From positions 158,907 through 222,906 of the IMG/VR virus record IMGVR_UViG_3300013233_000093: a DNA stretch of 64,000 nt. One strand, written 5' to 3'. Position numbers and translations under genes: made by a program. Under the pieces are notes generated by a model. It worked only from the letters and a program-made list of their open reading frames with translations, was not told the origin of the DNA and did no database searches. Positions within the stretch are counted from its first letter, which is position 1. The number at the start of each line of letters is the position of its first letter. Positions 23,563 to 40,105 of the stretch are shown one piece after another.

Positions 23563-23646
23563 CTATATTACTTTAGTGATACTTAGGTAATAATACTTAG
23601 GTGCACTGTTATAACTAATAGATCTCTTACTAGAGATCAAAGGATA
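23563..23646 (+). promoter_or_regulatory. Early promoter plus 70-bp leader duplicated at 40036-40105
   Basis: 23577-23646 equals 40036-40105 except a 4-nt hairpin loop. Confidence 0.85.
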
Positions 23647-23652
23647 AAGATT

Positions 23653-24522
23653 ATGTTTAAAATGATTAAAAGGTTGTTTGCCTGGATTAAGAAACTTCCA
23701 GTAATTGTACAAATTATGGTATTGGTTGTAGCCCTGCCCCTGGCTGCCGCGGCAGCTGTGGCATATGCAGTAACAATTGCAATGGTTTTAGTTTGGACAT
23801 GCACGGTTACACTCGCACAATTGTGTGCGAGTGTAACTGCCAAGGGACACCTCTACAGAGTAACCACACCAGACGGCATGGTCGGGTACATCGGAGGTAC
23901 CGTCCACAGTATGGTGCAGGCGCCGATGAAGTATATCCGCGCCGTCCGCGCAACTGGTAATTTGCTGGTGGAATACCGGGGATGTTGGGTTAAGGAAAAC
24001 GCTGTCGAAATTGCGGGGCTTAAGCAGAAGTTCTCTCCGGAGATTCCGGTCGAGCATTTGGTTGAAATGGAGGTAGAGAATGCTATTGCCCCTTTAACCC
24101 AGCTCCTGTTTGGCGGGTTGTTGACAATGGAGCGTACCCTTGAACGACATGCTGATAGCAAGTCGGCTGAGGTAGAGGACTTGCCTTCTATGGCCATGCA
24201 CTTGGATAGCATCCAGTGCCTAACGCCGCTGTACGCGGCGCGTACAGCGGCCATCGGCGCGTTTGCGAGCACAGCGGCGTTTGTAAAGACGGCGTATGCC
24301 ATTACGTACAAGGGCACAACGCCATTAGGCACCCATCTTTGTATGGGTGAGTCGTACGGCCTTAACAGCCGCAGCGCCATTCAGGCGCTGCGGCTGATGG
24401 ACGAGCTGGATGCCGGCCGTCCAGCCACTTTGATGGTCGGCGTGCTCCACCTGTACGCAGGAGGCCCATTCGCCTGCCTTGAGGTCTTAAAAGACAGAGG
24501 CTGCAAAATCGAACGCATGTAA
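23653..24522 (+). CDS. Membrane-anchored TraB/GumN (Tiki-like) family protein
   Basis: LYRVTTPDG..GYIGGTVH, LLVE, MVGVLHL..G, LKDRGCKIERM; hydrophobic N-terminus. Confidence 0.7.
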   Translation: MFKMIKRLFAWIKKLPVIVQIMVLVVALPLAAAAAVAYAVTIAMVLVWTCTVTLAQLCASVTAKGHLYRVTTPDGMVGYIGGTVHSMVQAPMKYIRAVRATGNLLVEYRGCWVKENAVEIAGLKQKFSPEIPVEHLVEMEVENAIAPLTQLLFGGLLTMERTLERHADSKSAEVEDLPSMAMHLDSIQCLTPLYAARTAAIGAFASTAAFVKTAYAITYKGTTPLGTHLCMGESYGLNSRSAIQALRLMDELDAGRPATLMVGVLHLYAGGPFACLEVLKDRGCKIERM

Positions 24523-24532
24523 GTGCGTTCGT

Positions 24533-24573
24533 AGATCTCCTCCGTTTAGGCGGGGGAGATCTTTTTTTTTTTT
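24533..24573 (+). terminator. Intrinsic terminator
   Basis: AGATCTCCTCCG...CGGGGGAGATCT plus long T-run. Confidence 0.85.
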
Positions 24574-24637
24574 GCGTTTACAGCATAGACTCCTATACAC
24601 AAGCGATCGCTTGTGTATAGATGACGTATACTTATAT

Positions 24638-25900
24638 TTACAAGACTCCGCAATCCACAGGTCCGACGTATATCGTGTCGGGGTATACCGGTGGTGCACG
24701 GTTTGGATCTATTGGCAAACAGTTTACAATGTCGCTGTCTACGAATGGGAATCCGCCGATAACGCTGCTGCTGTCTGTAACGTCTCCGCTATCTGTGCTG
24801 TCGCCTGAGCTATCGTCGGTGCTGTCGGTGGTGTCTACCACCACAGAGTCATCACTGATAACGCTGCTGCTGTCACTCTCGGTAGCTGTGTCTGCGACGA
24901 CCGTGTCGTCCACACCGGCCTCTACCAGGATGTCGTCTCCAGATACAACCTCGGCAGTACCGCTAGTTGTGTCTGTGGAGGTGCTGTCCGTAGAAGTACT
25001 GTCTGTGCTATCTGTACTGTCACTTGACGTACTATCGGTACTATCCGTAGTGTCAGTAGTGGTGTTATCTGTAACCGTTTCCACCGTGTTATCGGACGTC
25101 TCTACTGTGTCAGTGGTCACTGTAGAAGAACCGTCTGCCTCCACCACCGTGGTTACGGTCTCTGTGGTATACACAGTAGTGACTGGATGATTTGCCAAAT
25201 GCGCTGCCAGTGATTCTTCAGCAGCGATCACCCTAGCAGTAAGCTTAACGTTCTCTTCCACACATGCATGGATGGCAGAAAACATCTGACTCATGTCTTC
25301 CCGCAACCGTCCCATAATTTTTATGGTTCTGCTGTCCTGCTCTTTAAGGGCAAGTCCAGCTAGATTTAACGGGCGTGACTCCACAAGCGATTGCTGCAGT
25401 CCCAACACACTGTCCCGTAACGGATTAAGGTGCGTGATTTGCGATAGTGGATGCGTGTGATCCTCTGGTGTAAACCCGCCGGGTATCTCAGTTAGATTGT
25501 TAAACGAGACGGACGTGGTTTTAACCGCATCGATCGTGGCACGCAGATCCATGATCAGTTGGTTACTGCGACCTTCCACACCACCGACTGCCTGATAGGT
25601 TAACAGTACTTTACTGTATACTCCGGGGTTTGTGATGTGGATTGCCGTGGCGGTTTCTATGCCAGTGGCCAAGGTGATGTCTGCATCTATGCTGTAAAAG
25701 TCATAGTCCGTACCAAGTAACAGAGGGACGCTAACGCCTTCTGCTCGCAGTATCAACCCTGGCGTGTACATGAGACCGTGGTTGGCCACGATAATGTACG
25801 CCGTAGTGGCAGATACCTCATGTAACTCATCTACGATGTAGTTGGAGGGGTTAGCCGCCGTACCATCGTATCTGTATTTTAAGGCGTTTACGACAGACAT
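24638..25900 (-). CDS. Virion structural (tail/baseplate) protein with Ser/Thr/Asp-rich tail
   Basis: YRYDGTAANPSNYIVDELH, TYQAVGG, FTPEDHTH; N-terminus shared with 35966 and 37692 (phiKZ-type tail family). Confidence 0.75.
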   Translation of the reverse strand: MSVVNALKYRYDGTAANPSNYIVDELHEVSATTAYIIVANHGLMYTPGLILRAEGVSVPLLLGTDYDFYSIDADITLATGIETATAIHITNPGVYSKVLLTYQAVGGVEGRSNQLIMDLRATIDAVKTTSVSFNNLTEIPGGFTPEDHTHPLSQITHLNPLRDSVLGLQQSLVESRPLNLAGLALKEQDSRTIKIMGRLREDMSQMFSAIHACVEENVKLTARVIAAEESLAAHLANHPVTTVYTTETVTTVVEADGSSTVTTDTVETSDNTVETVTDNTTTDTTDSTDSTSSDSTDSTDSTSTDSTSTDTTSGTAEVVSGDDILVEAGVDDTVVADTATESDSSSVISDDSVVVDTTDSTDDSSGDSTDSGDVTDSSSVIGGFPFVDSDIVNCLPIDPNRAPPVYPDTIYVGPVDCGVL

Positions 25901-25915
25901 TGTATCGTGCCCTCA

Positions 25916-26293
25916 TTAAATAATATCGTCAAAGAAATGCGTACGTATGTACCCGTATACCCTCGTGCCTAATTGCATGGCGGATGCTCTACGAGGCTTC
26001 ACCTCGCAAGCAGCCAGTGCCATTTTAAAGTGTTCGTTAGCCACTGTCCAACCGTGCCCGTTTACCAATAGCCAGTCGTGAACTACTGCAGCAAGAAAGT
26101 ACTTATCTACAGGAGGGTAAAGTCCCCACAGCCATCTTGGCACTGAAGCGCCGTCCGTCACAAACCCTGCTTCTATATCGTAACCCAAGATCGTAATCTT
26201 ATCGCGCAGTCGATAGCGCACCGTCGGGTTATCCACAGAAGGGAGTAAGATGTCGACAGCGACGCATTTGATGTCTTTAAGCGTGGATTGCAT
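25916..26293 (-). CDS. DUF1353 family protein
   Basis: GFVTDGASVPRWLW...AAVVHDWL. Confidence 0.85.
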   Translation of the reverse strand: MQSTLKDIKCVAVDILLPSVDNPTVRYRLRDKITILGYDIEAGFVTDGASVPRWLWGLYPPVDKYFLAAVVHDWLLVNGHGWTVANEHFKMALAACEVKPRRASAMQLGTRVYGYIRTHFFDDII

Positions 26294-26479
26294 TACCTAC
26301 TCCTTTTTAAAACCGCCGAGCACTCTTATAAAAGAACCCGGTAAATAAATTAGCCATCCGTGGTATACTCACGCTAACATGAGCTCCCTTTCCCTCTAAA
26401 CGCGATGTGACCGTGCGGCTAGGCACAGCCCCTACACCATGCCTTTGCCGCAGCAAGCGGATGGCATCGCGTTCCTCCT

Positions 26480-28213
26480 TTAACCCAGCACGTGTACTAA
26501 GCCGGTGTTCAAACCAGCCGCGTCGTTCCCTGTGCTACCGGCCAACCCACGAATGCCAGACAAGTCAACAGACACGTCGTGTCCGAAACTGTCCCCGCTC
26601 AGTGAACTGGCTGATACGATAGACGCAGTGTTGCCCCAGACAGAAGCTGTATTTAGATACACTAAAACCATGCCTGTTTCAACGGCTGCGTTATCTTGAA
26701 ACGGAGCGCCAACAAGTAACGTCAAACCGTCACCTGATAGTGCCACCGAGGTCCCAAAGTTTGCACCCAGCTCAACGGTGGGCGCTTCTATCTTTGTAAC
26801 TGCAGTCCATACGGACGTTGTGTTACTGTAAATGTACACACCACCGGCACCGGCCAGTGTAGCGTCATCTGCATTAGCGCCAATGGCACACGTAAGCCCG
26901 TCGTTTGAGATGGACACCGCAAAGCCAAAGTGATCGTTAGCGGTTACGCTTAGATCTGTCAATTCAGACGTAAGGCTCCATGCACCAGCAGCCAGTGTGT
27001 ATACTTCCGCTTTACCTGCACCTACTCCTGCAGTAGAGTCATAGGGAGACCCCACTACCAGATTGTTGGCGAGGCCGTCGACGTCGACTGCGTGACCAAA
27101 GTACCCGTCAGCGATAGCCACTGGCGGTGCAATACCTGCGGTCTGTGTCCACACACCTAAGGCGTCTTTCGTGAACACGTACACATAGCCCGCCGTCGTG
27201 ACCGGGATCACGCCCACTGTTTTAGTAGGTGATCCAATTACCACGCAGTTACCTGCGGTGTTTACACTCACACTGTAGCCGAACCATCCGATGTCTGTGT
27301 GATCCAATGGCACCAGTGATGTATCCAGTGTCCAGACACTGCCTGTGCGTTTATACACATGTACCGCACCAGCACCGACTACGTTATTGACATTACTGTT
27401 ACCATACGCACCCACGGTTAAAACATCGCCCGTTTCGTTAAGAGACACGTCACAACCAAAGTATGCGCTGGCTTGTCCAAGCGGATGCATGAGTTTTTCT
27501 TTCTCTACCCAAATACCTGCGACTTGTTCATAAAGAAACACGGCGCCTGAGTCTAGTCCGAGTGTGTCGTCCAGATACATACCTACAGCTGCGTACACGC
27601 CGTTTCCAGAGATAGCAGTGGCATTGCCATACTGACCGCCTAAAGACGGCGTAGAGGGCACCAGCGTCCCTACAGTGCCTGTGATGTCCAACGCTTCCAC
27701 GGTGAACGACGTCACAGGACCAAACTCAGAGACCACGCCGTTACTGCCTTCGTAACTTACACGAGCAAAGTATTGAGTGGTGGCGTTTAGTGTAACGCCC
27801 AGCGCACCCAAATCCACTGTGTTACTGGTACTCACGGTTCTACCACTGTCGTACACTACGTTGGTAAATGTAACGTCTAACGCAAGCACCAGGCGATAAG
27901 CCACTTGGGTGTCTGAGTTATAGTTTACATCCACGCCCGTAAAGGAAGACAGTGTGATGATTGGAGAGGGCACTACGTTTAACGCACCGTTAACTGGCAC
28001 CGTTACCTTGGGAGGCGCCACGCCTGTTAAGATAGACGAGGTAATCGCCTGACCACCGGGTGTACTGCCGTCGTGAATGTGAATCACGGGCGCCGCTGTA
28101 TCGGTATAATCAATCACCATTTCATTTAGAGGACCTGTGTAGGCGCCGTTAGCGCCTGCCGTAAACGTGCGTTTCCACAGCCACGGCTCGGTCATTTGTT
28201 TTTCGCCAGCCAT
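26480..28213 (-). CDS. Tail fibre/adhesin: Mtd_N-like + FN3-like + FG-GAP propeller
   Basis: YTGPLNEMVID...IHDGSTPGG; QYFARVSY; seven (F/Y)G..V.lS..G...vGA blades. Confidence 0.85.
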   Translation of the reverse strand: MAGEKQMTEPWLWKRTFTAGANGAYTGPLNEMVIDYTDTAAPVIHIHDGSTPGGQAITSSILTGVAPPKVTVPVNGALNVVPSPIITLSSFTGVDVNYNSDTQVAYRLVLALDVTFTNVVYDSGRTVSTSNTVDLGALGVTLNATTQYFARVSYEGSNGVVSEFGPVTSFTVEALDITGTVGTLVPSTPSLGGQYGNATAISGNGVYAAVGMYLDDTLGLDSGAVFLYEQVAGIWVEKEKLMHPLGQASAYFGCDVSLNETGDVLTVGAYGNSNVNNVVGAGAVHVYKRTGSVWTLDTSLVPLDHTDIGWFGYSVSVNTAGNCVVIGSPTKTVGVIPVTTAGYVYVFTKDALGVWTQTAGIAPPVAIADGYFGHAVDVDGLANNLVVGSPYDSTAGVGAGKAEVYTLAAGAWSLTSELTDLSVTANDHFGFAVSISNDGLTCAIGANADDATLAGAGGVYIYSNTTSVWTAVTKIEAPTVELGANFGTSVALSGDGLTLLVGAPFQDNAAVETGMVLVYLNTASVWGNTASIVSASSLSGDSFGHDVSVDLSGIRGLAGSTGNDAAGLNTGLVHVLG

Positions 28214-28222
28214 TAACCTCTC

Positions 28223-29902
28223 CTAAGCGTATGTGTATACCGCACCGGCTTCGTTACCGTTAGTGCCTTCACCGAAAGCACCCACTGCACCGACAGAACC
28301 GTCTGCTGATAATGATGTTGAAATACCCACGTAATCGTAGGACGTTGCGTTACTTGCGGAAACAGAGGTGCCAGCTTGCACCCACGTGCCTGTGGCTTTA
28401 GAGAAAATACTAAAGTCACCTGCGTACACGTTAGCCCCATACGCACCTGCAATGATTAACAGCCCGTCACCTGAGATGGCAACCGAACGACCAAACGCAT
28501 CGCTTGCAGATAACCCGGAAGGCACCAGTCGTGTACCACTGTCCCATGCACCGTTAACGGTATCGTAAGTGAATACGTATATCGCGCCTGCAGAAGTCGC
28601 AGTGGCATCTTCACCGTACGCACCGATTACAACAGTATTACCGTCAGTAGACGAATCCACCGAGTAACCAAAGTATCCGTAAAGCTCGGGAGTGGGTGGG
28701 TAGAGTACATCGTCTTCGTTATAACCACCACCGCCATCGGGTGAGAATACGAACACGGCACCTGCGTCGGTTTGACCTGCATCGTCGGACAAATAAGCGC
28801 CCACGAACAAGCGTGACGCATCCCCCGCCATAGACACAGACGTCCCAAAGCGATCGCCGGTAGTGGTGTTATTAGCCAACACTTCGTTTTCTTTGCCGTC
28901 TGTAAAATCGCGGTTATCGGGATCCCACGTATAAACAGCACCGCTGGAGTTACCATTAGCTGGATTAAGGTCGGAACCTGCTGCTAACCATAAACCGTCA
29001 TCAGAGATGGATACTGAAATGCCTAACTGGTCATCTTGATTACCCGTAGCCAGCATTTTTACATCTTCACTCCAGTTGTTCCCGCCGCCGCCGTCTAGGA
29101 AGATATAGATAGCGCCTTCTGCGGGAGCATTACCGCCATCGTGCATATAAGCACCAACCGCCAGTACATCACCCACGTCGTTCAACGACACAGAGTAACC
29201 AAAGAAATCGCCAGATTGTGTATCGCTGCCTGTAAATGCCGCGTCCTCGATCCATTTCAAGGTAGGTGCATCCCATTTATAGATATACACCTTACCGCCG
29301 TCAGTACCAGCATCAGTTTGCAAGTACGAACCTACGGCTAATGTCAGTCCATCGGCAGACAATGCCACCGACTGTCCAAAGCGATCGCCGCCAGCAGCAT
29401 CACTGGCGTAAACGATGTCTGTCTCTGTAGACAAGACATCTGCCAATGTGCTAAAGGAAATCACAGGTGACCATGAGGACAACGGTGCAAGGTTGGATTC
29501 ATAGCGCACTTGGATGTAGTACGTAGTACCTTGGATTAACGTAAGTCCTAACGAGGTTAAATCCAACGACGTTAGGTTCGCGGTATCACGGGACGTATCC
29601 ACGACTAACGTGGACATGGCTGCGTCTGTAGCCACTCGCCAGTAAGAGGCCACGTGCGTGCCGTCTCCTGACATTGTACTTGCGGTTACAACAGGAGCAG
29701 TGGTAAACCCACCAGCACCGTCCAGTGGGGAAGTCACGGAAGGAGCTGTAATGGCAAACCCTACTGGGTCTAACGAGACACCACCCGCCACTGTATTTTG
29801 AATCAACAACTGTCCCTTGCCTTCCCGAACAAGCAACTCGCCATACTCGCCTGCTTTAGCGGGCGCTTCTAAGGCAGTCAACGGATGTAGTTTTACTCGC
29901 AT
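28223..29902 (-). CDS. Tail fibre/adhesin: Mtd_N-like + FN3-like + FG-GAP propeller
   Basis: GELLV; TTYYIQVRY...SSWS; repeated FG.SV.LS.DG..L.VGA. Confidence 0.85.
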   Translation of the reverse strand: MRVKLHPLTALEAPAKAGEYGELLVREGKGQLLIQNTVAGGVSLDPVGFAITAPSVTSPLDGAGGFTTAPVVTASTMSGDGTHVASYWRVATDAAMSTLVVDTSRDTANLTSLDLTSLGLTLIQGTTYYIQVRYESNLAPLSSWSPVISFSTLADVLSTETDIVYASDAAGGDRFGQSVALSADGLTLAVGSYLQTDAGTDGGKVYIYKWDAPTLKWIEDAAFTGSDTQSGDFFGYSVSLNDVGDVLAVGAYMHDGGNAPAEGAIYIFLDGGGGNNWSEDVKMLATGNQDDQLGISVSISDDGLWLAAGSDLNPANGNSSGAVYTWDPDNRDFTDGKENEVLANNTTTGDRFGTSVSMAGDASRLFVGAYLSDDAGQTDAGAVFVFSPDGGGGYNEDDVLYPPTPELYGYFGYSVDSSTDGNTVVIGAYGEDATATSAGAIYVFTYDTVNGAWDSGTRLVPSGLSASDAFGRSVAISGDGLLIIAGAYGANVYAGDFSIFSKATGTWVQAGTSVSASNATSYDYVGISTSLSADGSVGAVGAFGEGTNGNEAGAVYTYA

Positions 29903-29912
29903 GACATCTCCC

Positions 29913-30623
29913 CTAAAGCGCTAAAGCATCTGCAATAGCTGTGGTAAAACGCTGTGATACGTTAATGTCTTGTAACGCAGGAAGATCTCCTGTGGAGACC
30001 GCCAAGTTCATCTGGATCTCCAACTCACCACGCACCTTATAACCCAGTGCGTAACGAGTAAGGATCGCACGATACAGCTCAGTAGCCGCAGTGCTGTCCG
30101 CGATGTCCAAAGAAGCAGATGCATTACGATCCGCCAGATGTCCTGGTGTGTTTAGATTGACTACTGCTTTGGCACGCCAAGTAGTGGCGGCTGCCCAGCC
30201 TGCAGTAAAGGCATCCATCAGATCTTTCGCGTCAGACTTAGCCGCGCCGTCGTGTGAGATCATCACTCCGCTGTAAGGCAGTCGAGTGGTGATGTACCGT
30301 TTATGCACGGCTTTCAACTCACGCAGTTTTACGTCCAACAACTCTTCGGCAGTCATATCCACTGCACTGTAGTTGATTGTAATGGTTGAATCGTTTTCTT
30401 CTCTACCGATCACCCGTAGACGTTGGTTTGGGCTTACAGGCGGCTTATTAGCCACGACCTGTTTTACAACCAGATGGTCTCCGATGGCAGCGCCACCGTG
30501 GATGGATCCTGGCACCAGGTTAGGGTCAATGCCGTTTCGTGCAGCCAGGTCACGCACTGCGATGGGATCGTATTCCACAGGACCCATAACACGTTTACCA
30601 CTTCTAAAAATTTCGCACAACAC
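29913..30623 (-). CDS. Probable tail fibre assembly protein (DUF4376-like)
   Basis: Between fibre genes; LLDVKLRELKA...TWR helical C-half. Confidence 0.5.
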   Translation of the reverse strand: MLCEIFRSGKRVMGPVEYDPIAVRDLAARNGIDPNLVPGSIHGGAAIGDHLVVKQVVANKPPVSPNQRLRVIGREENDSTITINYSAVDMTAEELLDVKLRELKAVHKRYITTRLPYSGVMISHDGAAKSDAKDLMDAFTAGWAAATTWRAKAVVNLNTPGHLADRNASASLDIADSTAATELYRAILTRYALGYKVRGELEIQMNLAVSTGDLPALQDINVSQRFTTAIADALAL

Positions 30624-30635
30624 GTTATACCACTC

Positions 30636-32354
30636 CTATCCGAATAAAATAACACCGCCGCCGTTTACAACGACGCTTGCATCTGATGCAGCACCTGCTG
30701 CTAATGTATCGCCACGATCGCTTACCGCCAGAGAACTGCCCAGCTTACCGCTGGCACCTACTGTGGTGCTGGTTAAGGTCACGGTCTCTATCCAGTTATT
30801 GGACAGATCTTTACTGAACATATAGATACTGCCCGCATCCACGCCGCCTGCTACTGTGTCTTTAAGACGCGCAGATACGAAGAGTTGGTCGCTGGTGGAT
30901 GTGAACACAAGCGCACCGCCAAAGGCATCGCCGAGTACGGTGGTCGCGGGCTTTAACAATCCATATTCTGTCCAGACACTGTTAATGTCCTTTCTATACA
31001 AATGCACTGTCCCTGTCTCTGTGCCGATCCCGCCTTCAGTGGGTGCGCCTACAGCGATCACACTGGCATCCGGACTGATGCAGACACTAAGGCCAAACTG
31101 TCCGTCTGCTTGTGGTGTAGACGATGTCAACGCGACTTCCGTCCACACACCTAAGACTTGCTCAAACACATACGCATCACCGGTCTTACCGGATGCTGCT
31201 CCGTGATATGTACCAATCACAATTACTTTCTTGTCATCCGACACACTTAGAGAGTACCCGAACTGTGCGGCTGTGACTTGTACCGCAGGCGTTAACACAC
31301 CTTTGTTATACCAGTCGTTTGCAGCATCCACTTCAAAGATTTGTGCAGTGCCCAGGGCGGTTGAATTACGCTCACCCACCACGACCATTGTGCCGTCAGA
31401 AGACACAGTCAGTGAACTGCCAAATAACGCAGATGCCACAGGAGTGTTAGACACCACTGTTTTCTCTAGTGTGTATGCGCCGTTTACTCTACGGTAGATA
31501 TGCACTTGTCCTGCGTTAGTGACCACGGAGCCGTTTACCACTGGATCTCCCAGTGCTTCAGATATAACAAGTACTTGTCCGTCATTAGACATGGCCATGG
31601 CCTGTCCAAAGTAACTGTATGTTACACCGGCGGGTGAGAAGATGCGTTGTGTCTCCACGTAAGCGTTGTTTACCAATTCACTGATATAGACAGATCCAGT
31701 ATCAATGATGGCGTTACCGTCTTCGTATGGCGCTCCTGTGGCCATAATGCTGCCATCGCCAGAGAGGGCTACTGAAGAACCAAAGAAATCATCTGCTGCT
31801 GCATCGGACGCCACAACGTGTGCTAATTCAGCTGTGGGATACGCCAACGCTACGGTAAAGCTTACAGGCGCACTCCAGTCAGACATTACCCCTGCAATAG
31901 AAGTATACCGCACTCTAGCGTAATACGTACCTACTGATAGTGGCGAGTTAAGACTGGCTACATCGAACTGCGTTAAAGCAGTATAAGACTCTGGTATATT
32001 AGCTACCAGGTTTTTCATTGTTACGTCGGTGGCGATTTCCCAAAAGGCAGTGGCTTGCTGTGCTACAGATTTATCACTGTTGATTCCTTCGAAAGGAACT
32101 GCAGATAACATAGGTTCTGGATGCACGCCTGTACTGCCTTCCACAGGCGTCACCATGATGGGTGTTACTACACCACCAATGCCAGTGCCCATCGCCGGAT
32201 AACCGCCTGGTGTAACGCCGTCACCCAAGCGTAAGCGAGGGGTGATATCACGACGATCTACAAACAACTCATCCTTTAACTGGATGTTGTTGAATAAGTC
32301 CGTCGCGTTAAACGAGTTTAAAACTACCGGCTGTGTTAAGAATACAGTAGGCAT
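30636..32354 (-). CDS. Tail fibre/adhesin: Mtd_N-like + FN3-like + FG-GAP propeller
   Basis: LRLGDGVTPGG; GTYYARVRY...SDWS; FFGSSVALSGDG...GAP repeats. Confidence 0.85.
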   Translation of the reverse strand: MPTVFLTQPVVLNSFNATDLFNNIQLKDELFVDRRDITPRLRLGDGVTPGGYPAMGTGIGGVVTPIMVTPVEGSTGVHPEPMLSAVPFEGINSDKSVAQQATAFWEIATDVTMKNLVANIPESYTALTQFDVASLNSPLSVGTYYARVRYTSIAGVMSDWSAPVSFTVALAYPTAELAHVVASDAAADDFFGSSVALSGDGSIMATGAPYEDGNAIIDTGSVYISELVNNAYVETQRIFSPAGVTYSYFGQAMAMSNDGQVLVISEALGDPVVNGSVVTNAGQVHIYRRVNGAYTLEKTVVSNTPVASALFGSSLTVSSDGTMVVVGERNSTALGTAQIFEVDAANDWYNKGVLTPAVQVTAAQFGYSLSVSDDKKVIVIGTYHGAASGKTGDAYVFEQVLGVWTEVALTSSTPQADGQFGLSVCISPDASVIAVGAPTEGGIGTETGTVHLYRKDINSVWTEYGLLKPATTVLGDAFGGALVFTSTSDQLFVSARLKDTVAGGVDAGSIYMFSKDLSNNWIETVTLTSTTVGASGKLGSSLAVSDRGDTLAAGAASDASVVVNGGGVILFG

Positions 32355-32774: not shown

Positions 32775-32776
32775 AA

Positions 32777-33851: not shown

Positions 33852-33922
33852 AGGTAAATCCTTGAAGTGTTTGAAGCAAAAAGAAGATTACTCCCACTCC
33901 GCGGCCTCTCCACAGGGTGACG

Positions 33923-34144
33923 TTAGCCCCCCTTTACGATACTCTTCAATCCCAACAAGTTGATGTCCACACGTCTAGACTTAGAGTTAGCGTGCAAGAT
34001 CACCCACTTGGATTTTGAGATAGGAGACTCGAAAATGAAATTCGGATCTTTGTAATCCACAAACACCGTTTCCGGATGTTCATTGATGTACGCAGCCAAA
34101 TGCATATTCCGAGAAGGTATCACGATTCGATGTAAATCACTCAT
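33923..34144 (-). CDS. Small hypothetical protein (DUF5659-like)
   Basis: NMHLAAYI motif; GGAG RBS before MSDLH. Confidence 0.6.
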   Translation of the reverse strand: MSDLHRIVIPSRNMHLAAYINEHPETVFVDYKDPNFIFESPISKSKWVILHANSKSRRVDINLLGLKSIVKGG

Positions 34145-34244
34145 GATGGAACTCCACATATTATTAAACAAAACCTCACCGAATATGTGACCGTTTCATA
34201 ATTATCTCCATGTACGAAACAACCTTTACGTCCAGCTAAGGGTT

Positions 34245-35963
34245 TTACGGTAATGTACCGCAGTCTATGATGTCATTAATCGTCATCAAGTCTGCGACGT
34301 TTACCGCACCAAGCACCGTCGTTGCCGCCAGTGCATCAGTTAGTGCCTGAGGCAGAAGCGCTGTCACAGCTGCAGTAGCAGCGGGTGCTAATTTAGCGTC
34401 CACCTCGGCGGTTACAGCAGCAGGTAAGTCTGCAGCAAGTTGCGTGGTAATCAAACCTGGCAATGTCAATGCTACAGTGTCTGCTACTTGTGTGCCAATG
34501 ACTGCTTGAATGGCTCCGGGCAACTGTACAGTCACCTCTGCCGTCACAGCCGCTGGCATGTTTGCGTTCAACAGATTTACCAACTCAGTCGTGAGCTGTC
34601 GCGTTACTTCAGCAGTCACCGCTGTGGATAACTGTAAAGTAACTTCTGTTTGAATGCTGTTGCTGATTTGATTCGTTACTTCCGTGCCCACCAGTGTAGC
34701 CAGGTTCAAAGCCAGGTAATCGGACACTGCAGTGGCCACAGACGAGCCAATCGTGTTTGTGATTACCGTGGTGATGTTAGCAAGATCCAATACCATTGCT
34801 GGTGTGATGTCTTGTAACTGCTGGGGTAAGTTGGTTGCGATGTTCAACGTAGTAATTGCGTCGTTTACCGCTGTGATTGCGGCGGCGCTCATTAGCGGCG
34901 GCAGATCAGTCAACTTAAACGTCGTCATAGACTGCGTTACGGTTGTGTTGATCGCATCCGGTATGGTCGTGGCCATAATGGGCGTCAACGCAACAGACAA
35001 TGCAGCGGACACTTCGTTTGTTACCGTAGACGCCAGCGCCTGTAAGTTGGTGACGTCTGTAGGCGTAATCAACTCAATGTGTGCAGGGATGTTAATTGGC
35101 GGGATGTACGTCGTTAACGCGGCTTGTACTGCAGTGTTAACCTGGTTAGGTATAGTGACGTCAAAGTTAAGTGCGGTCAATGCCGCGTTTACCGTTGTAT
35201 TCACCGCACCCGTAATGTCAGCTGCAACCAAAGAAGCAGAAACCGCGTTAGCGACTTGCGAAGGCAATGTAACATTGACAATGTCGTTCGTGGCTAATAA
35301 AATCTTATCCGCGATAGACGAATCAATACCTGCAGCGGCGATGGCCAAAGAAACTTGTGCCACAACCTTACCCGCTAAGTCTTCCGCAAGTAACTGTGCA
35401 GTCACCTCTGTTGTAACTGCTGGTGTAATGGCGGTAGCAAGAACACCCGTCAGTACACGGTTTACTTCAGCCGTTACCTTAGCGGGGATATCTTGCAGTA
35501 CAACAGTGTCTGTAACCATTCCTGGTAGATTGGCCAGTGCCAGAGTCGTGGTGACCTTTGTGCCAATCGCAACATCGATTTCATTCGCCAACGCCAACTG
35601 CAAAGACGATGTTACATTAGCAGTCACTGCCGCTGTAATCAACGCATTGAGGTTGGCCAGGTCTGCTGCTTGCGCGACCGTAATAGCACCGATGTGTGTG
35701 GGTAGGATTGTCGTTAAGTCAATCAGTCCCATCGCAGTAGCGACTGCTGTATCCACCGTGGTGGCGATACCGGCTAAGGCATTAACCACATCTACAGATA
35801 ACAGGCCTAGGTTAATCCAGGTCTTGCCTGCAACGGCAGGATTATACCACAACTCGCCAGTTACTGTAATGAGCGCAGGCAGTGCAGGGTCTGTCGTGGG
35901 CACTGCTGGATAATCCGGCAGTGAAAATGGAGCTTGAAACTCCAGTGGTGATAAAACTAACAT
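34245..35963 (-). CDS. Ala/Val/Thr/Leu-rich long helical fibre protein
   Basis: AVTAEVTxQL repeats; C-terminal IDCG; AGGAG RBS. Confidence 0.75.
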   Translation of the reverse strand: MLVLSPLEFQAPFSLPDYPAVPTTDPALPALITVTGELWYNPAVAGKTWINLGLLSVDVVNALAGIATTVDTAVATAMGLIDLTTILPTHIGAITVAQAADLANLNALITAAVTANVTSSLQLALANEIDVAIGTKVTTTLALANLPGMVTDTVVLQDIPAKVTAEVNRVLTGVLATAITPAVTTEVTAQLLAEDLAGKVVAQVSLAIAAAGIDSSIADKILLATNDIVNVTLPSQVANAVSASLVAADITGAVNTTVNAALTALNFDVTIPNQVNTAVQAALTTYIPPINIPAHIELITPTDVTNLQALASTVTNEVSAALSVALTPIMATTIPDAINTTVTQSMTTFKLTDLPPLMSAAAITAVNDAITTLNIATNLPQQLQDITPAMVLDLANITTVITNTIGSSVATAVSDYLALNLATLVGTEVTNQISNSIQTEVTLQLSTAVTAEVTRQLTTELVNLLNANMPAAVTAEVTVQLPGAIQAVIGTQVADTVALTLPGLITTQLAADLPAAVTAEVDAKLAPAATAAVTALLPQALTDALAATTVLGAVNVADLMTINDIIDCGTLP

Positions 35964-35965
35964 GT

Positions 35966-37690
35966 CTAGCTCCTACTTACGCGTGCGCGTACATTGCCTG
36001 CTGCAGAAAGAACAATCTGCATGTTGTTGGCGTCTACGTTCTCCACGCCTAATACATCACGTCTCCATTTACCTGTGGCATCCTGCACCCAAATAATGAC
36101 ATCACAGAAATCATCATTTAAGTTGTGCGGTAGATTGTGAATCGTGGTGGGTGTGGTGGATATGTAATCCCAGGTAGCGCCCTGTAAAGCGGTCACGTAG
36201 TTGTGCACTAACGTAAGTTCGTTTTGCAACTCCGTTATAAGTAATGTCAGACCATCTTGACGATCTGAGACATTGACTACCGATTGAGATAAGTCACTGG
36301 CCACAGAAGCAGCTGCCCAAGTACTGGGCTGCACCACCACTTTAACGGTAGGTGTGGTATTATCAAATCTCAACAAGAATGCATTTAACCCGTCCAACTC
36401 AATGTCCACCAGATCACGTCTGTAACGTCCTGGAGAGACTTCCATCCATAAAGTAATGGATAGGTACGACGAGTTCAGTCTGTGTGTAACAAACTGTTCT
36501 GGCTGTGCTGAGTTGTACTTTGCGATATACGAGTTAGGCAAGGGCTGTTGTAACACCACCATCATTAACTGCGCCGCGTCCATTGTGATACGAACGACGT
36601 TGTTGGATATGGTTTCTGCTTCGTACACCGTCTGTGTCCAGATACCATTGATATCCACCCACACACAGATCGAAAGAAAACCCGTCGATAAGTTATGGTT
36701 TATATCCACCGTAGTCGCAGGCACAATGTTTTCATACACATGCCCACCTGCCGTGACCTTTCTGATCACCGCGCGTATGCGGATAGGTGTACTGGAGTTC
36801 ACAATAACCGTGTTAGCATCCAACATCATCGCGTCATGCAATGGTACAGACCACCGACCGTTATCGTCCTCTGCCCAGATTTGTACATCGAGAGAAAACG
36901 AGTTAAGTCCATGAGTGATCGTGTGCGTGGCAATCGCAGTAGGCGAGTTATACGCAAAGCTGTCCACTGTAGGAACCGGCAACTGAAAGCCAGTTTCAAT
37001 GGTGGTGTTCAGTGTATCGAACAACTCCATCGCGTCTAAATAAGACTGCTTTACACCACCGAAGTTAGACTCCACCGTGTTCTGTCTGTCTTCCACATAG
37101 CCCTGACGTATCTCTACACCAGTGACTTGTTGTAACGTGGCGACATCGCTGCCAGGAGACAGTCTGTTTGCACCTACTGTCAACTCACCCACGCCTGCAA
37201 TCAATGCAGTACAGAACTCATCGTTGTTTAAAAGAGGTCTTTTAAACCGTGTGTTATACCCATCGCTGCCACGGAAGTTCAACCATTCTGCTGTAGAGAG
37301 CGGGTTAAACGTAGCCGAACGAATCGAGTCTAAAAGACCTTTATCTTCGTATACGTCTACTTGCACTCCATCAACAACATGATGTCCGACTGCCTGGTAA
37401 ACCAAACGTATGTACAGACCCTGTCGTTCTATGACAAGATACGTATACGCCTCTTCGCCTGTATCGGCTGTAATGGCCAGAAACAAAGGAGAGAATTGAT
37501 AATCTACATTGGCCACCAATGGTGTCCACTGAGGACTTGCCAGTGATACAGTCCCTTCCACAATCAAACCGTGTCGGTAGAATGCACCTGCTGTGGGAAA
37601 CACAGCCACAGATGAATTTGTGGAATGCACTTCGTCTTGTATTAAGTTATCCGCCGAAATGGCGGTATGGTCAAAAGCATACGTCGCCAT
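35966..37690 (-). CDS. Tail protein: phiKZ-type N-domain plus four HxL beta-domains
   Basis: YAFDHTAISADNLIQDEVH; THGL, NHNL, THRL, PHNL repeats. Confidence 0.75.
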   Translation of the reverse strand: MATYAFDHTAISADNLIQDEVHSTNSSVAVFPTAGAFYRHGLIVEGTVSLASPQWTPLVANVDYQFSPLFLAITADTGEEAYTYLVIERQGLYIRLVYQAVGHHVVDGVQVDVYEDKGLLDSIRSATFNPLSTAEWLNFRGSDGYNTRFKRPLLNNDEFCTALIAGVGELTVGANRLSPGSDVATLQQVTGVEIRQGYVEDRQNTVESNFGGVKQSYLDAMELFDTLNTTIETGFQLPVPTVDSFAYNSPTAIATHTITHGLNSFSLDVQIWAEDDNGRWSVPLHDAMMLDANTVIVNSSTPIRIRAVIRKVTAGGHVYENIVPATTVDINHNLSTGFLSICVWVDINGIWTQTVYEAETISNNVVRITMDAAQLMMVVLQQPLPNSYIAKYNSAQPEQFVTHRLNSSYLSITLWMEVSPGRYRRDLVDIELDGLNAFLLRFDNTTPTVKVVVQPSTWAAASVASDLSQSVVNVSDRQDGLTLLITELQNELTLVHNYVTALQGATWDYISTTPTTIHNLPHNLNDDFCDVIIWVQDATGKWRRDVLGVENVDANNMQIVLSAAGNVRARVSRS

Positions 37691-37691
37691 T

Positions 37692-38678
37692 TTAATCACT
37701 CACTTTAAGTAACGTCAGCGCACAAGACACGTTAATGTCTGCGACGACAATGGATTCCACAGTAGCGTCAGGGATACGGATCTGCATGGTTATAACACGA
37801 CCTGCTGTAATGCCCACTGGACTTACGCCCAATGTAGAAGCAGAAACCGCATAGCCGTCTATCAAGTACCGAAACTCGTAATGTTGCCGTACACCGTTTA
37901 ACAGCGCTCTTGGATTACCTGATAAAAACACCAGATAGTTGCCTGTGTATTTTACCAACACACTGACACCTACGTCTACCCATTCATTCATAGTGACCAA
38001 TGGAAGCTGTTTTAACACCGTGCCGGTAGAACCGCCTGTGTGATAAAACGCAGTCGCTGCTGCTAACTGTCCAATGGCCAATGAAACGTTTTTCATGGAG
38101 TCTACAATAGGCGCTACTAACGTCGTATCCAGATCCACTATATCACTCATTGTAATATGACGGTCTGGTGATCTTACTGCTAATGACAACGTTTCAAAGG
38201 CAGCCAATATTTCTGGCACACCTGTGATGGTGGTCAGGGGTGTATTGTGGGGTGTAGGGGGGAAGGTCGCAGGGATGTCTGTCAGACTGCTCCAAGGTGT
38301 GTTTATCAACTCACCTAATGTACTAAGACCGTCTGCTAATGCAGTGGTCATGGCATTGACGTAATCGCCGCCCAGCGTCCGATAAACCAACCGATATGAC
38401 CCCGTGGCCGCTAGGTTGTAAAAACCTATGGCACCGTAAATAGGGAATCCCGTCTCTATTGAAGCCTCTTCAAAGGGGTAAGCAAAGAAGAAATCACTGC
38501 CTTCGGAAATAGGCATACCTGACTCTGCATCTACCACCACCATGCTGCTTGCAAAGAAGGGTGCTGCGTCTGGAATAAGGTAATTATATTGCGTTCCGTT
38601 TATGGCCGTGATTGTATGAAGTTCATTAGGGATTTTGTTACCCGGTATTACCCCCAATGGATCGAAGTCATATGGCAT
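37692..38678 (-). CDS. Virion structural (tail) protein, phiKZ-type family
   Basis: YDFDPLG..PGNKIPNELH, PDAAPFFA, YRTLGG, FPPTPH. Confidence 0.8.
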   Translation of the reverse strand: MPYDFDPLGVIPGNKIPNELHTITAINGTQYNYLIPDAAPFFASSMVVVDAESGMPISEGSDFFFAYPFEEASIETGFPIYGAIGFYNLAATGSYRLVYRTLGGDYVNAMTTALADGLSTLGELINTPWSSLTDIPATFPPTPHNTPLTTITGVPEILAAFETLSLAVRSPDRHITMSDIVDLDTTLVAPIVDSMKNVSLAIGQLAAATAFYHTGGSTGTVLKQLPLVTMNEWVDVGVSVLVKYTGNYLVFLSGNPRALLNGVRQHYEFRYLIDGYAVSASTLGVSPVGITAGRVITMQIRIPDATVESIVVADINVSCALTLLKVSD

Positions 38679-38739
38679 CTTGTTATCCTCTTGGGTGCTG
38701 ATCATATAATTATAGAGTGCACACGTATAGGGGCAAAAA

Positions 38740-39954
38740 ATGTATAACGTGGTGTCGGTATTGGTAAGAAATAACCGTGAATGGTACGAATTGGATTACA
38801 CAGACTTGTTGTTATCTGACCTGGTGTCTGTGAATCACACGGTGCACGTCACTGTGCATGACGGTGAGCAAAGTGAGAATACGTTTAACTTACGAAGTGC
38901 GTTACAGGAGTTACGCGTACGGACGGATAACAAGACATTAGACGAGTGGGTCGCGACGCTCGAACTGCTGCCTTGGAAGTCACTGGTCAATCAACAGCCA
39001 CTGGATAACGTAAGAAAGATGCACGTCACTGATATCTATCACTGGGATGTGAAATATGAGATCGGTAACTACGAATACGGTCGTGGTCAATCCGTGCCTT
39101 TGGGATCCAGTACGGATTTGATGATCTATAACAAAGGTGATGTGGATGTCATCAGTTGGATGCAGCGGCATTGCTTGTTTAGCATTAACGGTTTCGTGCA
39201 CCGCAGTGAAGTCGTGGGAGATGCATTGGTAGTGCGTCATGCATTAGCGTACCTACGGGCATCCGGTACACAAGCTGCTATTATCCGTGTGATCGATTTA
39301 TCTGAGTTAGGCGAATGGTCTTGGCACGTCATGGACTCGGCTGAGTTAAAGGTGTTAGAACCTACGGATAACGATCGTAACCGAAACGAGACTCGTGTGA
39401 CGTATGAACATGCAGGACTGTCTGGTAAATCCATTGCAGGTGTATTGGACGCACATCCACATTTGTTTGACGGTGTGTTTACCATGCACGATGCGGATCA
39501 CGTGATGATTACACTGAACCGTAAGGCGATGGTGCAACACGAGTCTAAGAATCCAGTACCCAGTCATGCAGACGGTCTTGTGGACGGTGTGTTGTCTCTG
39601 AGTAACTTTGATGCAGTCCAGTATCTTAATCACGGGGTGAGTGGGATTATCATTTTCGAGAATCCAGATGTGAACGTAAAACGTACGCTGATGGGTCGTA
39701 CGGACATCCCTGGGTTATATACGTCCCATCGCACGCACAGTGGGATCATGGTGGACAGTAAGGGATGGGTGGTGGATTACACGTTAGAAGGTCTGTCAAC
39801 CGACATGATGGTCTACAGTACCACTGCTGGATATCGACGTGCATACTTGTCTGATATGTACGGCCAGCGCTCATACCTGAGTCATGGTGAATACGCAGTA
39901 AGCGCGATAGCGGATGATGTATACGCAATCGACTTATACGCAACGATGGATTAA
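38740..39954 (+). CDS. Conserved phiKZ-like virion structural protein
   Basis: CLFSINGFVH and PGLY motifs, divergent from tail cluster. Confidence 0.6.
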   Translation: MYNVVSVLVRNNREWYELDYTDLLLSDLVSVNHTVHVTVHDGEQSENTFNLRSALQELRVRTDNKTLDEWVATLELLPWKSLVNQQPLDNVRKMHVTDIYHWDVKYEIGNYEYGRGQSVPLGSSTDLMIYNKGDVDVISWMQRHCLFSINGFVHRSEVVGDALVVRHALAYLRASGTQAAIIRVIDLSELGEWSWHVMDSAELKVLEPTDNDRNRNETRVTYEHAGLSGKSIAGVLDAHPHLFDGVFTMHDADHVMITLNRKAMVQHESKNPVPSHADGLVDGVLSLSNFDAVQYLNHGVSGIIIFENPDVNVKRTLMGRTDIPGLYTSHRTHSGIMVDSKGWVVDYTLEGLSTDMMVYSTTAGYRRAYLSDMYGQRSYLSHGEYAVSAIADDVYAIDLYATMD

Positions 39955-39956
39955 CT

Positions 39957-39991
39957 ATATAGACTATCCCGTAGTGGGATAGTCTATATGC
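39957..39991. terminator. Stem-loop ending TATGC
   Basis: ATATAGACTATCCC-gtagt-GGGATAGTCTATAT. Confidence 0.75.
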
Positions 39992-40013
39992 TCTATTTAT
40001 GTGTCCGCTAAAT

Positions 40014-40105
40014 AAACAAAACTATATCACTATTATGATACTTAGGTAATAATACTTAGGTGCACTGTTATAACTAATAGATCTCTAGTAAGAGATCAAA
40101 GGATA
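40014..40105 (+). promoter_or_regulatory. Early promoter plus duplicated 70-bp leader
   Basis: CAAAACTATATCACTATTATGAT then leader shared with 23577-23646. Confidence 0.85.

What the first reader, a model, noticed from the sequence alone, without database searches (positions are those of the whole stretch)
23577..40105. Duplicated 70-bp expression cassette with an inverted hairpin loop
Seen: 23577-23646 and 40036-40105 are identical except inside a hairpin: GATCTCT-TACT-AGAGATC (23621) vs GATCTCT-AGTA-AGAGATC (40080), exact reverse complements. Each follows an early promoter, precedes an unrelated single gene with its own terminator, and sits among structural genes. The leader also holds an ATACTTAGGT direct repeat. 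Inference: a portable promoter-leader-RBS unit that captures new genes (moron-like); the flip is a template-switch microinversion or a small switch beside the RBS.
Basis: partly seen in the sequence, partly recalled or inferred. Interest (0 to 1): 0.62.

Follow-up and report, generated by a model that had tools for sequence, protein, structure and literature searches.

The report
Repeated early-gene leader, jumbo phage
The two 70-base copies are two of seven copies of a standard "early promoter + folded 5' leader + ribosome site" that a phiKZ-like giant phage puts before small orphan genes; the flipped hairpin loop is best read as a one-step, harmless copying error, so this is an ordinary though tidy piece of phage regulatory grammar.

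Summary
Window 23577-23646 and 40036-40105 agree at 66 of 70 bases. The four differences are exactly the hairpin loop, TACT against AGTA, which are reverse complements.

The pair is part of a family of seven copies, all on the + strand of a 222.9-kb phiKZ-like jumbo phage with no close relatives in any collection searched. Each copy follows a strongly conserved promoter-like motif whose core, TATATTAC or TATATCAC, matches the phiKZ early promoter core.

Each copy encodes a 62-77 nt leader. The "direct repeat" folds as a 10-bp hairpin with two G-U pairs near the predicted 5' end. A second 6-7 bp hairpin sits three bases before the AAAGGA ribosome site. Each leader drives one small ORF without detectable homologues, closed by an intrinsic terminator.

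25 of 31 such promoters are followed at once by a hairpin, drawn from at least six sequence families.

The copies are mosaics: promoter type, spacer and ribosome-site-to-ATG blocks reassort. The shared DNA ends sharply 15-24 nt inside the coding sequence. This indicates recombination between modules.

The loop flip changes hairpin stability by 0.4 kcal/mol. Assembled contigs show one orientation per locus. I read it as a template-switch microinversion, not a switch.

The parts
23535..23577 (+). Predicted virion-RNA-polymerase early promoter of unit A. Type 1 core TATATTAC with conserved upstream CTGTGTTCGC. The start site is inferred at about G23578.
   Evidence: 31 genome copies of the motif, all on the + strand; the identical 8-mer core lies upstream of phiKZ early genes. 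PMC7598289: the early motif is centred near -10.
23580..23603 (+). HP1 of unit A. The two ATACTTAGGT repeats pair as a 10-bp RNA hairpin (two G-U pairs, loop AUAA) starting about 3 nt from the inferred 5' end.
   Evidence: minimum-free-energy and centroid folds of all 7 copies; 96.7% of cells paired, two one-sided pair-keeping changes; position-specific hairpin at 25 of 31 promoters.
23604..23620 (+). AU-rich spacer. It varies between copies but is identical in A, B and the copy at genome 64244.
23621..23638 (+). HP2 of unit A: stem GATCTCT/AGAGATC, loop TACT at 23628-23631.
   Evidence: -7.8 kcal/mol.
23639..23655 (+). Shine-Dalgarno AAAGGA (23639-23644), an 8-nt spacer and the ATG at 23653. 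The module shared with the copy at genome 16204 continues to codon 5.
23653..24522 (+). Gene A: 289 aa, hydrophobic N-terminus, no detectable homologue.
   Evidence: only itself among 1.84 billion representatives.
24533..24574 (+). Intrinsic terminator of unit A: 13-bp stem followed by a T run.
39956..39990 (+). Terminator-like hairpin of the preceding gene (38740-39954). The copy at genome 98468 has nearly the same sequence upstream.
39994..40036 (+). Predicted early promoter of unit B. Type 2 core TATATCAC, the common genome-wide form.
   Evidence: (family D1).
40039..40062 (+). HP1 of unit B.
40080..40097 (+). HP2 of unit B: same stem, loop AGTA at 40087-40090, the reverse complement of A's loop.
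   Evidence: -7.4 kcal/mol.
40098..40113 (+). Shine-Dalgarno AAAGGA and the ATG at 40111.
40111..40515 (+). Gene B: 134 aa, no detectable homologue.
40526..40580 (+). Terminator of unit B: 14-bp stem with a T-rich tail.
8070..8110 (+). The same promoter with a short leader holding a single copy of the ACTTAGGTAAT word directly before a small ORF. A second such case is at 55224.
   Evidence: (family D11).

Best explanation
The 70-nt element is the transcribed leader of a stereotyped early-gene expression module in a phiKZ-like, nucleus-forming-type jumbo phage.

How the module is built (inferred except where a call shows it directly):
- A predicted virion-RNA-polymerase early promoter starts the RNA at about the G of GAUAC.
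- The first 26 nt fold into a 5'-terminal hairpin, HP1, whose arms are the two copies of the 'direct repeat'. I infer that it protects the mRNA from 5'-end-dependent decay, as known 5' stem-loops do.
- An AU-rich spacer follows. Then comes a second hairpin, HP2, three bases before an exposed AAAGGA Shine-Dalgarno site. I infer that HP2 acts as a structural insulator, or as a second protective end after processing, keeping the ribosome site open whatever ORF follows.

Seven such modules each drive one small ORF without detectable homologues, ending in an intrinsic terminator.

The copies stay alike through selection on the stems and the Shine-Dalgarno site, and through ectopic recombination or gene conversion between copies. 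The 66-nt identity of A and B is a recent conversion or recombination patch bounded by the promoter and the Shine-Dalgarno site.

The TACT/AGTA difference is one replication template-switch event across the perfect palindrome. It inverted the loop and is selectively neutral.
For: Phage type:
- phiKZ gp29 domain, divergent family B polymerase and a weak chimallin hit.
- Several phiKZ-type RNA polymerase beta/beta' PHROGs.
- Major capsid protein 25-30% identical to 218 phiKZ-like records.

Promoter:
- 31 copies of the motif, all on the + strand.
- The core TATATTAC is the same 8-mer found before phiKZ early genes gp5, gp6, gp10.1, gp31, gp36, gp41.3 and gp54.
- This fits the published description of early motifs centred near -10 (PMC7598289), with further conservation at -20/-30 (PMC11512511).
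- One copy precedes the chimallin-like gene, as in phiKZ.

RNA fold:
- HP1 and HP2 are the minimum-free-energy and centroid structures in most copies, with HP1 predicted in all seven.
- HP1 needs two G-U pairs, which exist only in the + sense. The two variable stem positions keep pairing.
- 25 of 31 promoters are followed within 4 nt by a perfect 7-10 bp hairpin, against 6.6% of random positions. These hairpins come from at least six unrelated sequences.

Module:
- Shine-Dalgarno site, ATG, single ORF and terminator in all seven.

Mosaicism:
- A and B share the spacer but differ in promoter type. B shares its promoter type and Shine-Dalgarno-to-ATG block with the copy at genome 34656. 154 of 325 informative site pairs are incompatible.
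- Identity drops from 29/30 to chance at codon 5-6.

Loop:
- All four differences are confined to the loop and are exact reverse complements.
- The C/G in the loop is private to A and B.
- The energies are -7.8 and -7.4 kcal/mol.
- Loop inversion by template switching is documented (PMC8794818, PMC8604942).
Against: - No transcript data. The start site, the early timing and the polymerase are inferred by analogy. The only RNA run from the sample held nothing.
- No compensatory double changes occur in either stem within the family. The stems could therefore be conserved as sequence rather than structure, or simply be young.
- The stability and insulator roles of HP1 and HP2 rest on general knowledge of 5' stem-loops, not on any test here.
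- Part of the site incompatibility comes from the poorly alignable region upstream of the promoter.
- Contigs cannot exclude a minority of flipped loops.
Confidence: 0.7

Rival explanations
1. The element is a portable, moron-like cassette that actively acquires foreign genes. The shared 5' module, and in four cases a shared 3' terminator, act as recombination handles that bring new ORFs into the early programme, as PeSL cassettes do in T4-like phages.
For: - The unit is promoter + gene + terminator, embedded among opposite-strand tail genes.
- The seven ORFs are mutually unrelated by phmmer and have no homologues anywhere.
- The homology boundary inside the coding sequence is sharp, and the blocks are mosaic.
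- The CCTCCCC...GGGGAGG terminator occurs only four times in the genome, each time closing one of these units.
Against: - The ORFs' GC content (0.455-0.532) brackets the genome value of 0.478, so nothing marks them as foreign.
- Three ORFs may be distant paralogues: shared MKL[IV]K start and IYE end, blastp E = 0.05. This fits duplication with fast divergence.
- There are no target-site duplications or mobility genes.
- No related genome is available to show an empty site.
Confidence: 0.25
2. The repeats and the palindrome are DNA-level operator sites. A phage or host DNA-binding protein would bind the two ATACTTAGGT repeats and/or the GATCTCT...AGAGATC palindrome just downstream of the promoter, to shut these seven early units off or on together.
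For: - Both elements are invariant as sequence in all seven copies, with no compensatory change.
- A palindrome with a free centre is typical of sites for dimeric binding proteins.
- The seven units form a distinct subset of the 31 promoters.
Against: - The centre of the palindrome is 3, 4 or 6 nt long. This changes half-site spacing and phase, which hairpins tolerate but dimeric operators do not.
- The repeats are 14 nt apart and pair only through G-U, a property of the + sense RNA alone.
- Other leader families carry a hairpin of unrelated sequence at the same position. This points to structure rather than a shared binding word.
Confidence: 0.1
3. HP2 together with the ribosome site is an RNA operator for a translational regulator. 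This would make the seven ORFs a post-transcriptional regulon, for example for timed shut-off of early proteins.
For: - HP2 is specific to this leader family. It lies 3 nt from the Shine-Dalgarno site, and its flanks (TA before, AAAGGA after) are invariant.
- From general knowledge, hairpin-plus-RBS operators are known for phage T4 gene 43 and for RNA-phage coat proteins.
Against: - The loop, usually the part such proteins read, is free to vary in sequence and length.
- No candidate regulator was identified and no expression data exist.
Confidence: 0.15
4. The loop is a programmed invertible switch that changes expression of the downstream gene.
For: - The loops are exact reverse complements at two loci.
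- Both orientation classes occur in both spacer groups of the family.
Against: - A 4-nt loop has no room for a recombinase site.
- The energy difference is 0.4 kcal/mol and Shine-Dalgarno exposure is similar.
- One contig spans 23598-23711 with no difference, and the AGTA-type contig continues into gene B's flank.
- The other loops differ in length as well.
Confidence: 0.03

Closest known systems
phiKZ-type early (virion RNA polymerase) promoters and their leaders
   Same: The core 8-mer TATATTAC is identical. It has an AT/T-rich conserved upstream part, lies before + strand genes of unknown function and before the chimallin-like gene, and the genome encodes phiKZ-type multisubunit RNA polymerase subunits (PMC7598289, PMC8244752, PMC11512511). 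phiKZ itself repeats a whole promoter-plus-leader of about 45 nt before gp6 and gp10.1.
   Different: Here most copies use TATATCAC, and conservation runs about 45 nt upstream. A hairpin follows the promoter almost every time (25 of 31), which the phiKZ examples looked at show only in part. Nothing here has been shown by transcript mapping.
PeSL (promoter-early stem-loop) cassettes of T4-like phages
   Same: Both are short conserved regulatory cassettes repeated between small, variable, mostly orphan early genes. Both serve as points of homologous exchange between otherwise unrelated sequences (PMC2839356, PMC4122927). The mosaic blocks and sharp homology boundaries seen here fit this.
   Different: A PeSL is a terminator stem-loop followed by a host sigma-70 early promoter. 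Here the conserved part is a phage-polymerase promoter, a structured 5' UTR and the first codons, and only four units share a terminator. PeSL-mediated exchange was shown by comparing close relatives, which are lacking here.
Morons of lambdoid phages
   Same: The unit is a self-contained promoter-gene-terminator inserted between genes of another transcription class.
   Different: Morons are defined in temperate phages, use host promoters and often differ in composition from their neighbours. Here the promoter belongs to the phage's own early class and GC content is genome-typical.
5'-terminal stem-loops that stabilise mRNA (E. coli ompA leader, phage T7 gene 10 leader; general knowledge)
   Same: A stable hairpin lies within a few nucleotides of the 5' end, followed by a single-stranded ribosome site.
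   Different: The role is inferred only. The 5' end has not been mapped.
Hairpin-loop inversion by replication template switching at (quasi)palindromes
   Same: A cluster of adjacent changes turns a loop into its reverse complement between perfect inverted arms. Typical cases are 4-nt loops (PMC8794818; spacer inversion in PMC8604942).
   Different: None in kind. Here the event is seen between paralogous copies in one genome rather than between orthologues.

Membership tests
phiKZ-like jumbo phage (genome context) | Hallmark genes: multisubunit RNA polymerase beta/beta' sets, phiKZ-type capsid, divergent family B polymerase, chimallin | tested here: met
   The chimallin hit is weak (E = 2.4e-4, below Pfam's cut-off).
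phiKZ-type early promoter | A highly conserved AT-rich core of about 10 nt, over-represented upstream of presumed early operons | tested here: met
   31 copies, all on the + strand. The core is identical to the 8-mer before phiKZ early genes. Described in PMC7598289.
phiKZ-type early promoter | Transcription starts about 7-10 nt downstream, early in infection, by the virion polymerase and without protein synthesis | not testable with these tools
   No RNA data hold this genome.
PeSL-type mobile regulatory cassette | Short conserved promoter/stem-loop motif repeated between small variable early ORFs | tested here: met
   Seven copies before small ORFs without detectable homologues. The composition differs: the hairpins lie after the promoter, not before it.
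PeSL-type mobile regulatory cassette | Insertions, deletions or replacements between close relatives have their end points in the cassettes | not testable with these tools
   No relative found. Only within-genome mosaicism is seen.
Moron | Own promoter and own factor-independent terminator around a single gene | tested here: met
Moron | Composition unlike the neighbours; absent from the same site in related phages | tested here: not met
   GC 0.455-0.532 against a genome value of 0.478. The absence test is impossible because there are no relatives.
Template-switch loop inversion | Clustered changes equal to the reverse complement of the loop, flanked by perfect inverted arms, with the rest unchanged | tested here: met
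   4 of 4 loop bases, 66 of 66 other bases identical, 7-bp perfect arms.
Programmed invertible switch | Both orientations coexist at one locus in a population | tested here: inconclusive
   Contigs of the single holding run show one orientation per locus. Contigs drop rare variants and no raw reads were available.
Known RNA families (Rfam) | Match at gathering score | tested here: not met
   No Rfam family in the whole window.

The most novel reading that the evidence does not exclude
In this deep-branching phiKZ-like lineage, a hairpin at the very 5' end may be an obligatory part of every virion-polymerase early transcript. It could serve for promoter escape, for protection in the unshielded first minutes of infection, or for routing of the RNA. 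On top of that, the seven leaders carrying HP2 and, in four cases, a private terminator would form a self-propagating two-ended cassette. That cassette would shuffle orphan genes into a separately controlled early regulon, making it a jumbo-phage counterpart of PeSL cassettes that I did not find described.
Probability: 0.2. Interest if true: 0.6.

Novelty: new member of a known kind. Interest (0 to 1): 0.35.

Why it matters
The result gives a ready-made, sequence-defined map of the early transcription units (31 promoters, at least three leader families) for an uncultured, very divergent phiKZ-like phage. It shows that its early messages almost always begin with a hairpin, a rule that could be looked for in cultured jumbo phages where 5' ends are mapped. 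It also offers a clean natural example of a loop microinversion between paralogous copies, and of recombination between regulatory modules. Such recombination is one way phages can place orphan genes under early control. None of this overturns current ideas.

Tried and rejected
Searches for relatives, none found:
- Megablast and blastn of both loci and of the cassette against 50,697 phage records: no match.
- Exact-pattern scans of IMG/VR for the leader, the hairpin plus Shine-Dalgarno site and the promoter. The only hit was one unrelated T7-like fragment, L009, with a 14-nt tandem array.
- Both metagenome scans. The leader found nothing. The promoter gave four hits with no other similarity to the genome, which I take as chance.
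- Protein-seeded locus searches with two neighbouring genes and the capsid gene: nothing.
- Word search with the flanking 404-aa protein and with genes A and B: only themselves.
- Full HMMER search with gene A: only itself.
- Atlas search with gene B: no usable lead, and the model is poor.

Other checks:
- T7-like single-subunit RNA polymerase (Pfam PF00940) in the genome: none, though the control genomes did not match it either. I had considered a T7-type promoter because of the shared TCACTAT word, and dropped it once the phiKZ-type polymerases were found.
- Sigma-70 reading of the motif: hexamer spacing does not fit, and the consensus scan does not pick up these sites.
- Rfam: nothing.
- Reads: only Logan contigs of one microbial-mat run hold the phage, and its RNA run holds nothing. 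Neither the start site nor minority loop orientations could be tested, and only locus A could be laid.
- Covariation within HP1: no two-sided changes, so it is uninformative.
- GATC in the stem as a methylation or restriction clue: GATC is not avoided in the genome (observed/expected 1.28), so this was dropped.
- Supplementary start-site tables of the phiKZ papers, and the 2014 phiKZ transcription paper, are not held.


Full report
**1. The observation**

Reading both places and aligning them confirms the finding. Window 23577-23646 and 40036-40105 agree at 66 of 70 positions. The four differences are the loop of a hairpin with arms GATCTCT and AGAGATC. The loop is TACT at 23628-23631 and AGTA at 40087-40090, which are exact reverse complements. 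The ATACTTAGGT word occurs twice, 14 nt apart, in each copy. The similarity is not chance: E = 2.4e-26 within the genome.

**2. The pair belongs to a family of seven**

The window is the last 64 kb of a 222,906-bp virus record. The record holds seven copies of the element, all on the + strand. The stem GATCTC/GAGATC, the two repeats and the AAAGGA after the stem are invariant.

The following parts vary:
- the spacer between repeats and stem;
- the stretch between AAAGGA and the ATG;
- the loop, which reads TAATAT (twice), TATT, TACT, AGTA, TAA and TTA.

Each copy is followed by an ATG 7-11 nt after AAAGGA and by one ORF of 76, 120, 85, 79, 89, 289 or 134 aa. Each ORF ends in a GC-rich hairpin with a T-rich tail.

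**3. What the genome is**

Pfam and PHROG scans of the large proteins find:
- a phiKZ gp29 domain, a divergent family B DNA polymerase and a weak chimallin match;
- several phiKZ-type RNA polymerase beta/beta' subunits, a phiKZ-type major head protein and a terminase.

The capsid protein is only 25-30% identical to 218 phiKZ-like phage records. The nearest are Vibrio jumbo phages. No T7-like polymerase was found. This is therefore a deep-branching phiKZ-like jumbo phage, assembled from a microbial-mat metagenome.

Around the two window copies lie:
- a baseplate protein and a DprA-like gene;
- a minus-strand cluster of tail-fibre-like FG-GAP proteins with a tail assembly chaperone;
- a virion structural protein.

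**4. The promoter**

Directly upstream of every copy lies a motif that occurs 31 times in the genome, always on the + strand. About 24 copies have the form ...TTCAAAACTATATCACTATTATGAT. Five or six have the form ...TCTATATTACTTTAGTGAT. Conservation continues about 45 nt upstream.

The 8-mer TATATTAC is the same word I found in front of phiKZ early genes gp5, gp6, gp10.1, gp31, gp36, gp41.3 and gp54, the chimallin gene. In the present genome one copy precedes the chimallin-like gene.

Published work says that in every jumbo phage with its own polymerases such a motif can be found before early operons. It is an AT-rich word of about 10 nt centred near -10, and where tested it is the early promoter used by the virion polymerase (PMC7598289). 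Further conservation lies at -20 and -30, and the genes behind it are mostly hypothetical (PMC8244752, PMC11512511).

I therefore read the motif as the early promoter and place the start at about the G of GAT, 7 nt after the core. This is inference. No RNA data hold this phage. The sigma-70 consensus scan does not pick these sites up.

**5. The leader as RNA**

Folding from the inferred start to 18 nt past the ATG gives the same picture in most copies, with HP1 predicted in all seven.
- The two "direct repeats" pair with each other into a 10-bp hairpin (HP1) with loop AUAA. This is possible because UACUUAGGUA is self-complementary once G-U pairs are allowed. The two G-U pairs exist only in the + sense.
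- After an unpaired AU-rich spacer comes HP2, 6-7 bp.
- The Shine-Dalgarno site begins 3 nt after HP2.

Within the family the stems hardly vary. The two variable stem positions of HP1 keep pairing (U-G to U-A, U-A to U-G), but no two-sided change occurs, so the family alone cannot prove structure.

The stronger argument comes from the other promoters. 25 of 31 are followed, within 4 nt of GAT, by a perfect hairpin of 7-10 bp, against 6.6% of random positions. These hairpins belong to at least six unrelated sequence families, for example GGACAAC...GUUGUC and GAUAAC...GUUAUC.

A hairpin at the very 5' end is thus a rule for this phage's predicted early transcripts, and HP1 is this family's version of it. 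HP2 is private to the seven-copy family. Rfam has no match.

**6. How it most likely works**

Shown by the calls above: the anatomy, the position-specific hairpins and the exposed ribosome site. The Shine-Dalgarno site is unpaired with probability 0.75 in copy A and 0.81 in copy B.

Inferred from established knowledge of 5' stem-loops in E. coli and T7 messages:
- HP1 protects the message from 5'-end-dependent decay.
- HP2 insulates the ribosome site from whatever ORF follows, or becomes a protective end after cleavage in the AU-rich spacer.

A regulator binding HP2 is possible but less likely, because the loop is free in sequence and length. A double-stranded DNA operator is less likely again, because the half-site spacing varies (3, 4 or 6 nt) and HP1 depends on G-U pairs.

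**7. History of the copies**

The copies are mosaics.
- A, B and the copy at genome 64244 share an identical spacer.
- A has promoter type 1 and B has type 2.
- B shares its promoter type and its Shine-Dalgarno-to-ATG block with the copy at genome 34656, and shares its upstream terminator hairpin with the copy at 98468.
- A shares its Shine-Dalgarno-to-ATG block and the first five codons with the copy at 16204. There, identity falls from 29/30 to chance at codon 5-6.
- 154 of 325 pairs of informative sites are incompatible with a single tree. Part of this comes from the poorly alignable far-upstream region.

The 66-nt identity of A and B therefore looks like a recent recombination or conversion patch bounded by the promoter and the ribosome site.

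Four units also end in a CCTCCCC...GGGGAGG terminator that occurs nowhere else in the genome. It resembles the conserved phiKZ terminator motif (PMC10914365). Three of their ORFs share a start (MKL[IV]K) and an end (IYE) but are not significantly similar.

The ORFs have genome-typical GC. Genes A and B have no homologue in Pfam, PHROGs, the 5.8-billion word search or, for gene A, the 1.84-billion HMMER search.

These facts fit two histories that I cannot separate without relatives. One is whole-unit duplication with very fast ORF divergence plus conversion of the regulatory ends. The other is PeSL-like exchange of ORFs between conserved ends (PMC2839356, PMC4122927). No relative exists in any collection searched.

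**8. The loop flip**

- All four differences between A and B sit in the 4-nt loop. Given four changed bases, the chance that they form the exact reverse complement is (1/3)^4, about 0.012.
- The C/G in the loop is found only in A and B, so the two loops derive from one another.
- One template-switch event across a perfect palindrome explains this. Such loop inversions, typically of 4-nt loops, are documented (PMC8794818, PMC8604942).
- Both orientation classes occur in both spacer groups: TTATTA, TTACTA and TTA against TAATAT, TAGTAA and TAA. This hints at recurrence or at conversion. With A/T-only loops this is weak evidence.
- The flip changes hairpin energy by 0.4 kcal/mol.
- In the only public run that holds the phage, kept as contigs, one contig spans 23598-23711 without a difference. 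This links TACT to gene A. A second contig, with loop-region differences from A, runs on into gene B's flank.
- No flipped form was seen, but contigs cannot show rare variants, and only locus A could be laid.

I find no support for a switch.

**9. Comparison, novelty and score**

The element works like a phiKZ-type early promoter with a stabilising, insulating leader. As a repeated cassette it behaves like PeSLs. phiKZ itself repeats a whole promoter-plus-leader before gp6 and gp10.1, so the phenomenon is present, if little remarked, in the type phage.

It meets the structural definition of a moron but not the compositional one.

I rate it a new member of a known kind, with interest 0.35. It is a clean and complete example in an uncultured lineage. 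The near-universal 5' hairpin is a testable rule. Otherwise nothing here conflicts with current understanding.

Noticed in passing
genome 35072, 64589, 98790, 121819 (outside the window; loci L021, L023, L024, L026): A CCTCCCC-loop-GGGGAGG hairpin with a T run occurs only four times on the + strand of the genome. Each time it is the terminator of one of the seven leader units. It closely resembles the conserved terminator motif reported for phiKZ (PMC10914365).
   Followed up: partly
window 1091, 5047, 9934, 16465 and 20 further sites outside the window: The same early-promoter motif is followed by other stereotyped leaders. About 12 begin with a GGACAAC/AGAUAAC...GUUGUC hairpin and about 5 with GAUAAC...GUUAUC, each conserved down to its own ribosome site. 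The phage therefore has at least three families of complete 5' UTRs behind one promoter.
   Followed up: partly
window 8070-8110 and 55224-55265: Two promoters are followed by a single copy of the ACTTAGG(T/A)AAT word and GTATTGATG. This gives a leader of 17-22 nt in which the AGG probably serves as the ribosome site. The two-copy hairpin of the seven-member family may have arisen from such a leader by a 14-nt tandem duplication.
   Followed up: no
L009 4456-4564 (IMGVR_UViG_3300027906_001212): An unrelated 5.4-kb viral contig carries 7.8 tandem copies of a 14-nt unit. It shares 24-25 nt exactly with the leader's double repeat. It also carries a T7-type terminase and an HNH endonuclease. The array lies in a long non-coding stretch after the terminase gene, like the short repeat arrays near T7-type genome ends. 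I judge it unrelated to the leader.
   Followed up: partly
L028 2665 and 4516 (phiKZ AF399011): phiKZ itself carries an identical promoter plus about 45-nt leader before gp6 and gp10.1. Duplicated promoter-leader-RBS units before different genes therefore also exist in the type phage.
   Followed up: partly
window 26480-32354 and 34245-38705, minus strand: A tail-fibre region with FG-GAP-repeat proteins of 577, 559 and 572 aa at 26480-32354, followed by unscanned ORFs of matching size (572 and 577 aa) at 34245-37699. Two 337-aa ORFs with tail-fibre or virion-structural-protein PHROG matches are each placed after a large block. It looks like a duplicated receptor-binding module.
   Followed up: no
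window 41580-41645: A perfect 30-nt direct repeat with 36-nt spacing inside the 482-aa minus-strand ORF (40648-42096). This amounts to a repeated 12-residue stretch in a protein with no family match.
   Followed up: no
window 63742-63999 and genome ends: Two tandem 129-nt copies (94% identical) lie at the very end of the record. The record's 'direct terminal repeat' is only 239 bp of exact overlap, so it may mark a circular assembly rather than true phage ends. The ORFs at the two ends, both on the minus strand, may be parts of one gene.
   Followed up: partly
whole genome: AATT (observed/expected 0.38), CTAG (0.38) and GGCC (0.49) are strongly under-represented, while GATC is not (1.28). This may reflect avoidance of host restriction sites.
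   Followed up: no
window 23638-23621 and 40097-40080, minus strand: Read on the minus strand, HP2 followed by a T-rich tail is flagged as terminator-like by the consensus scan. It could weakly stop antisense transcription running out of the neighbouring minus-strand late genes.
   Followed up: no
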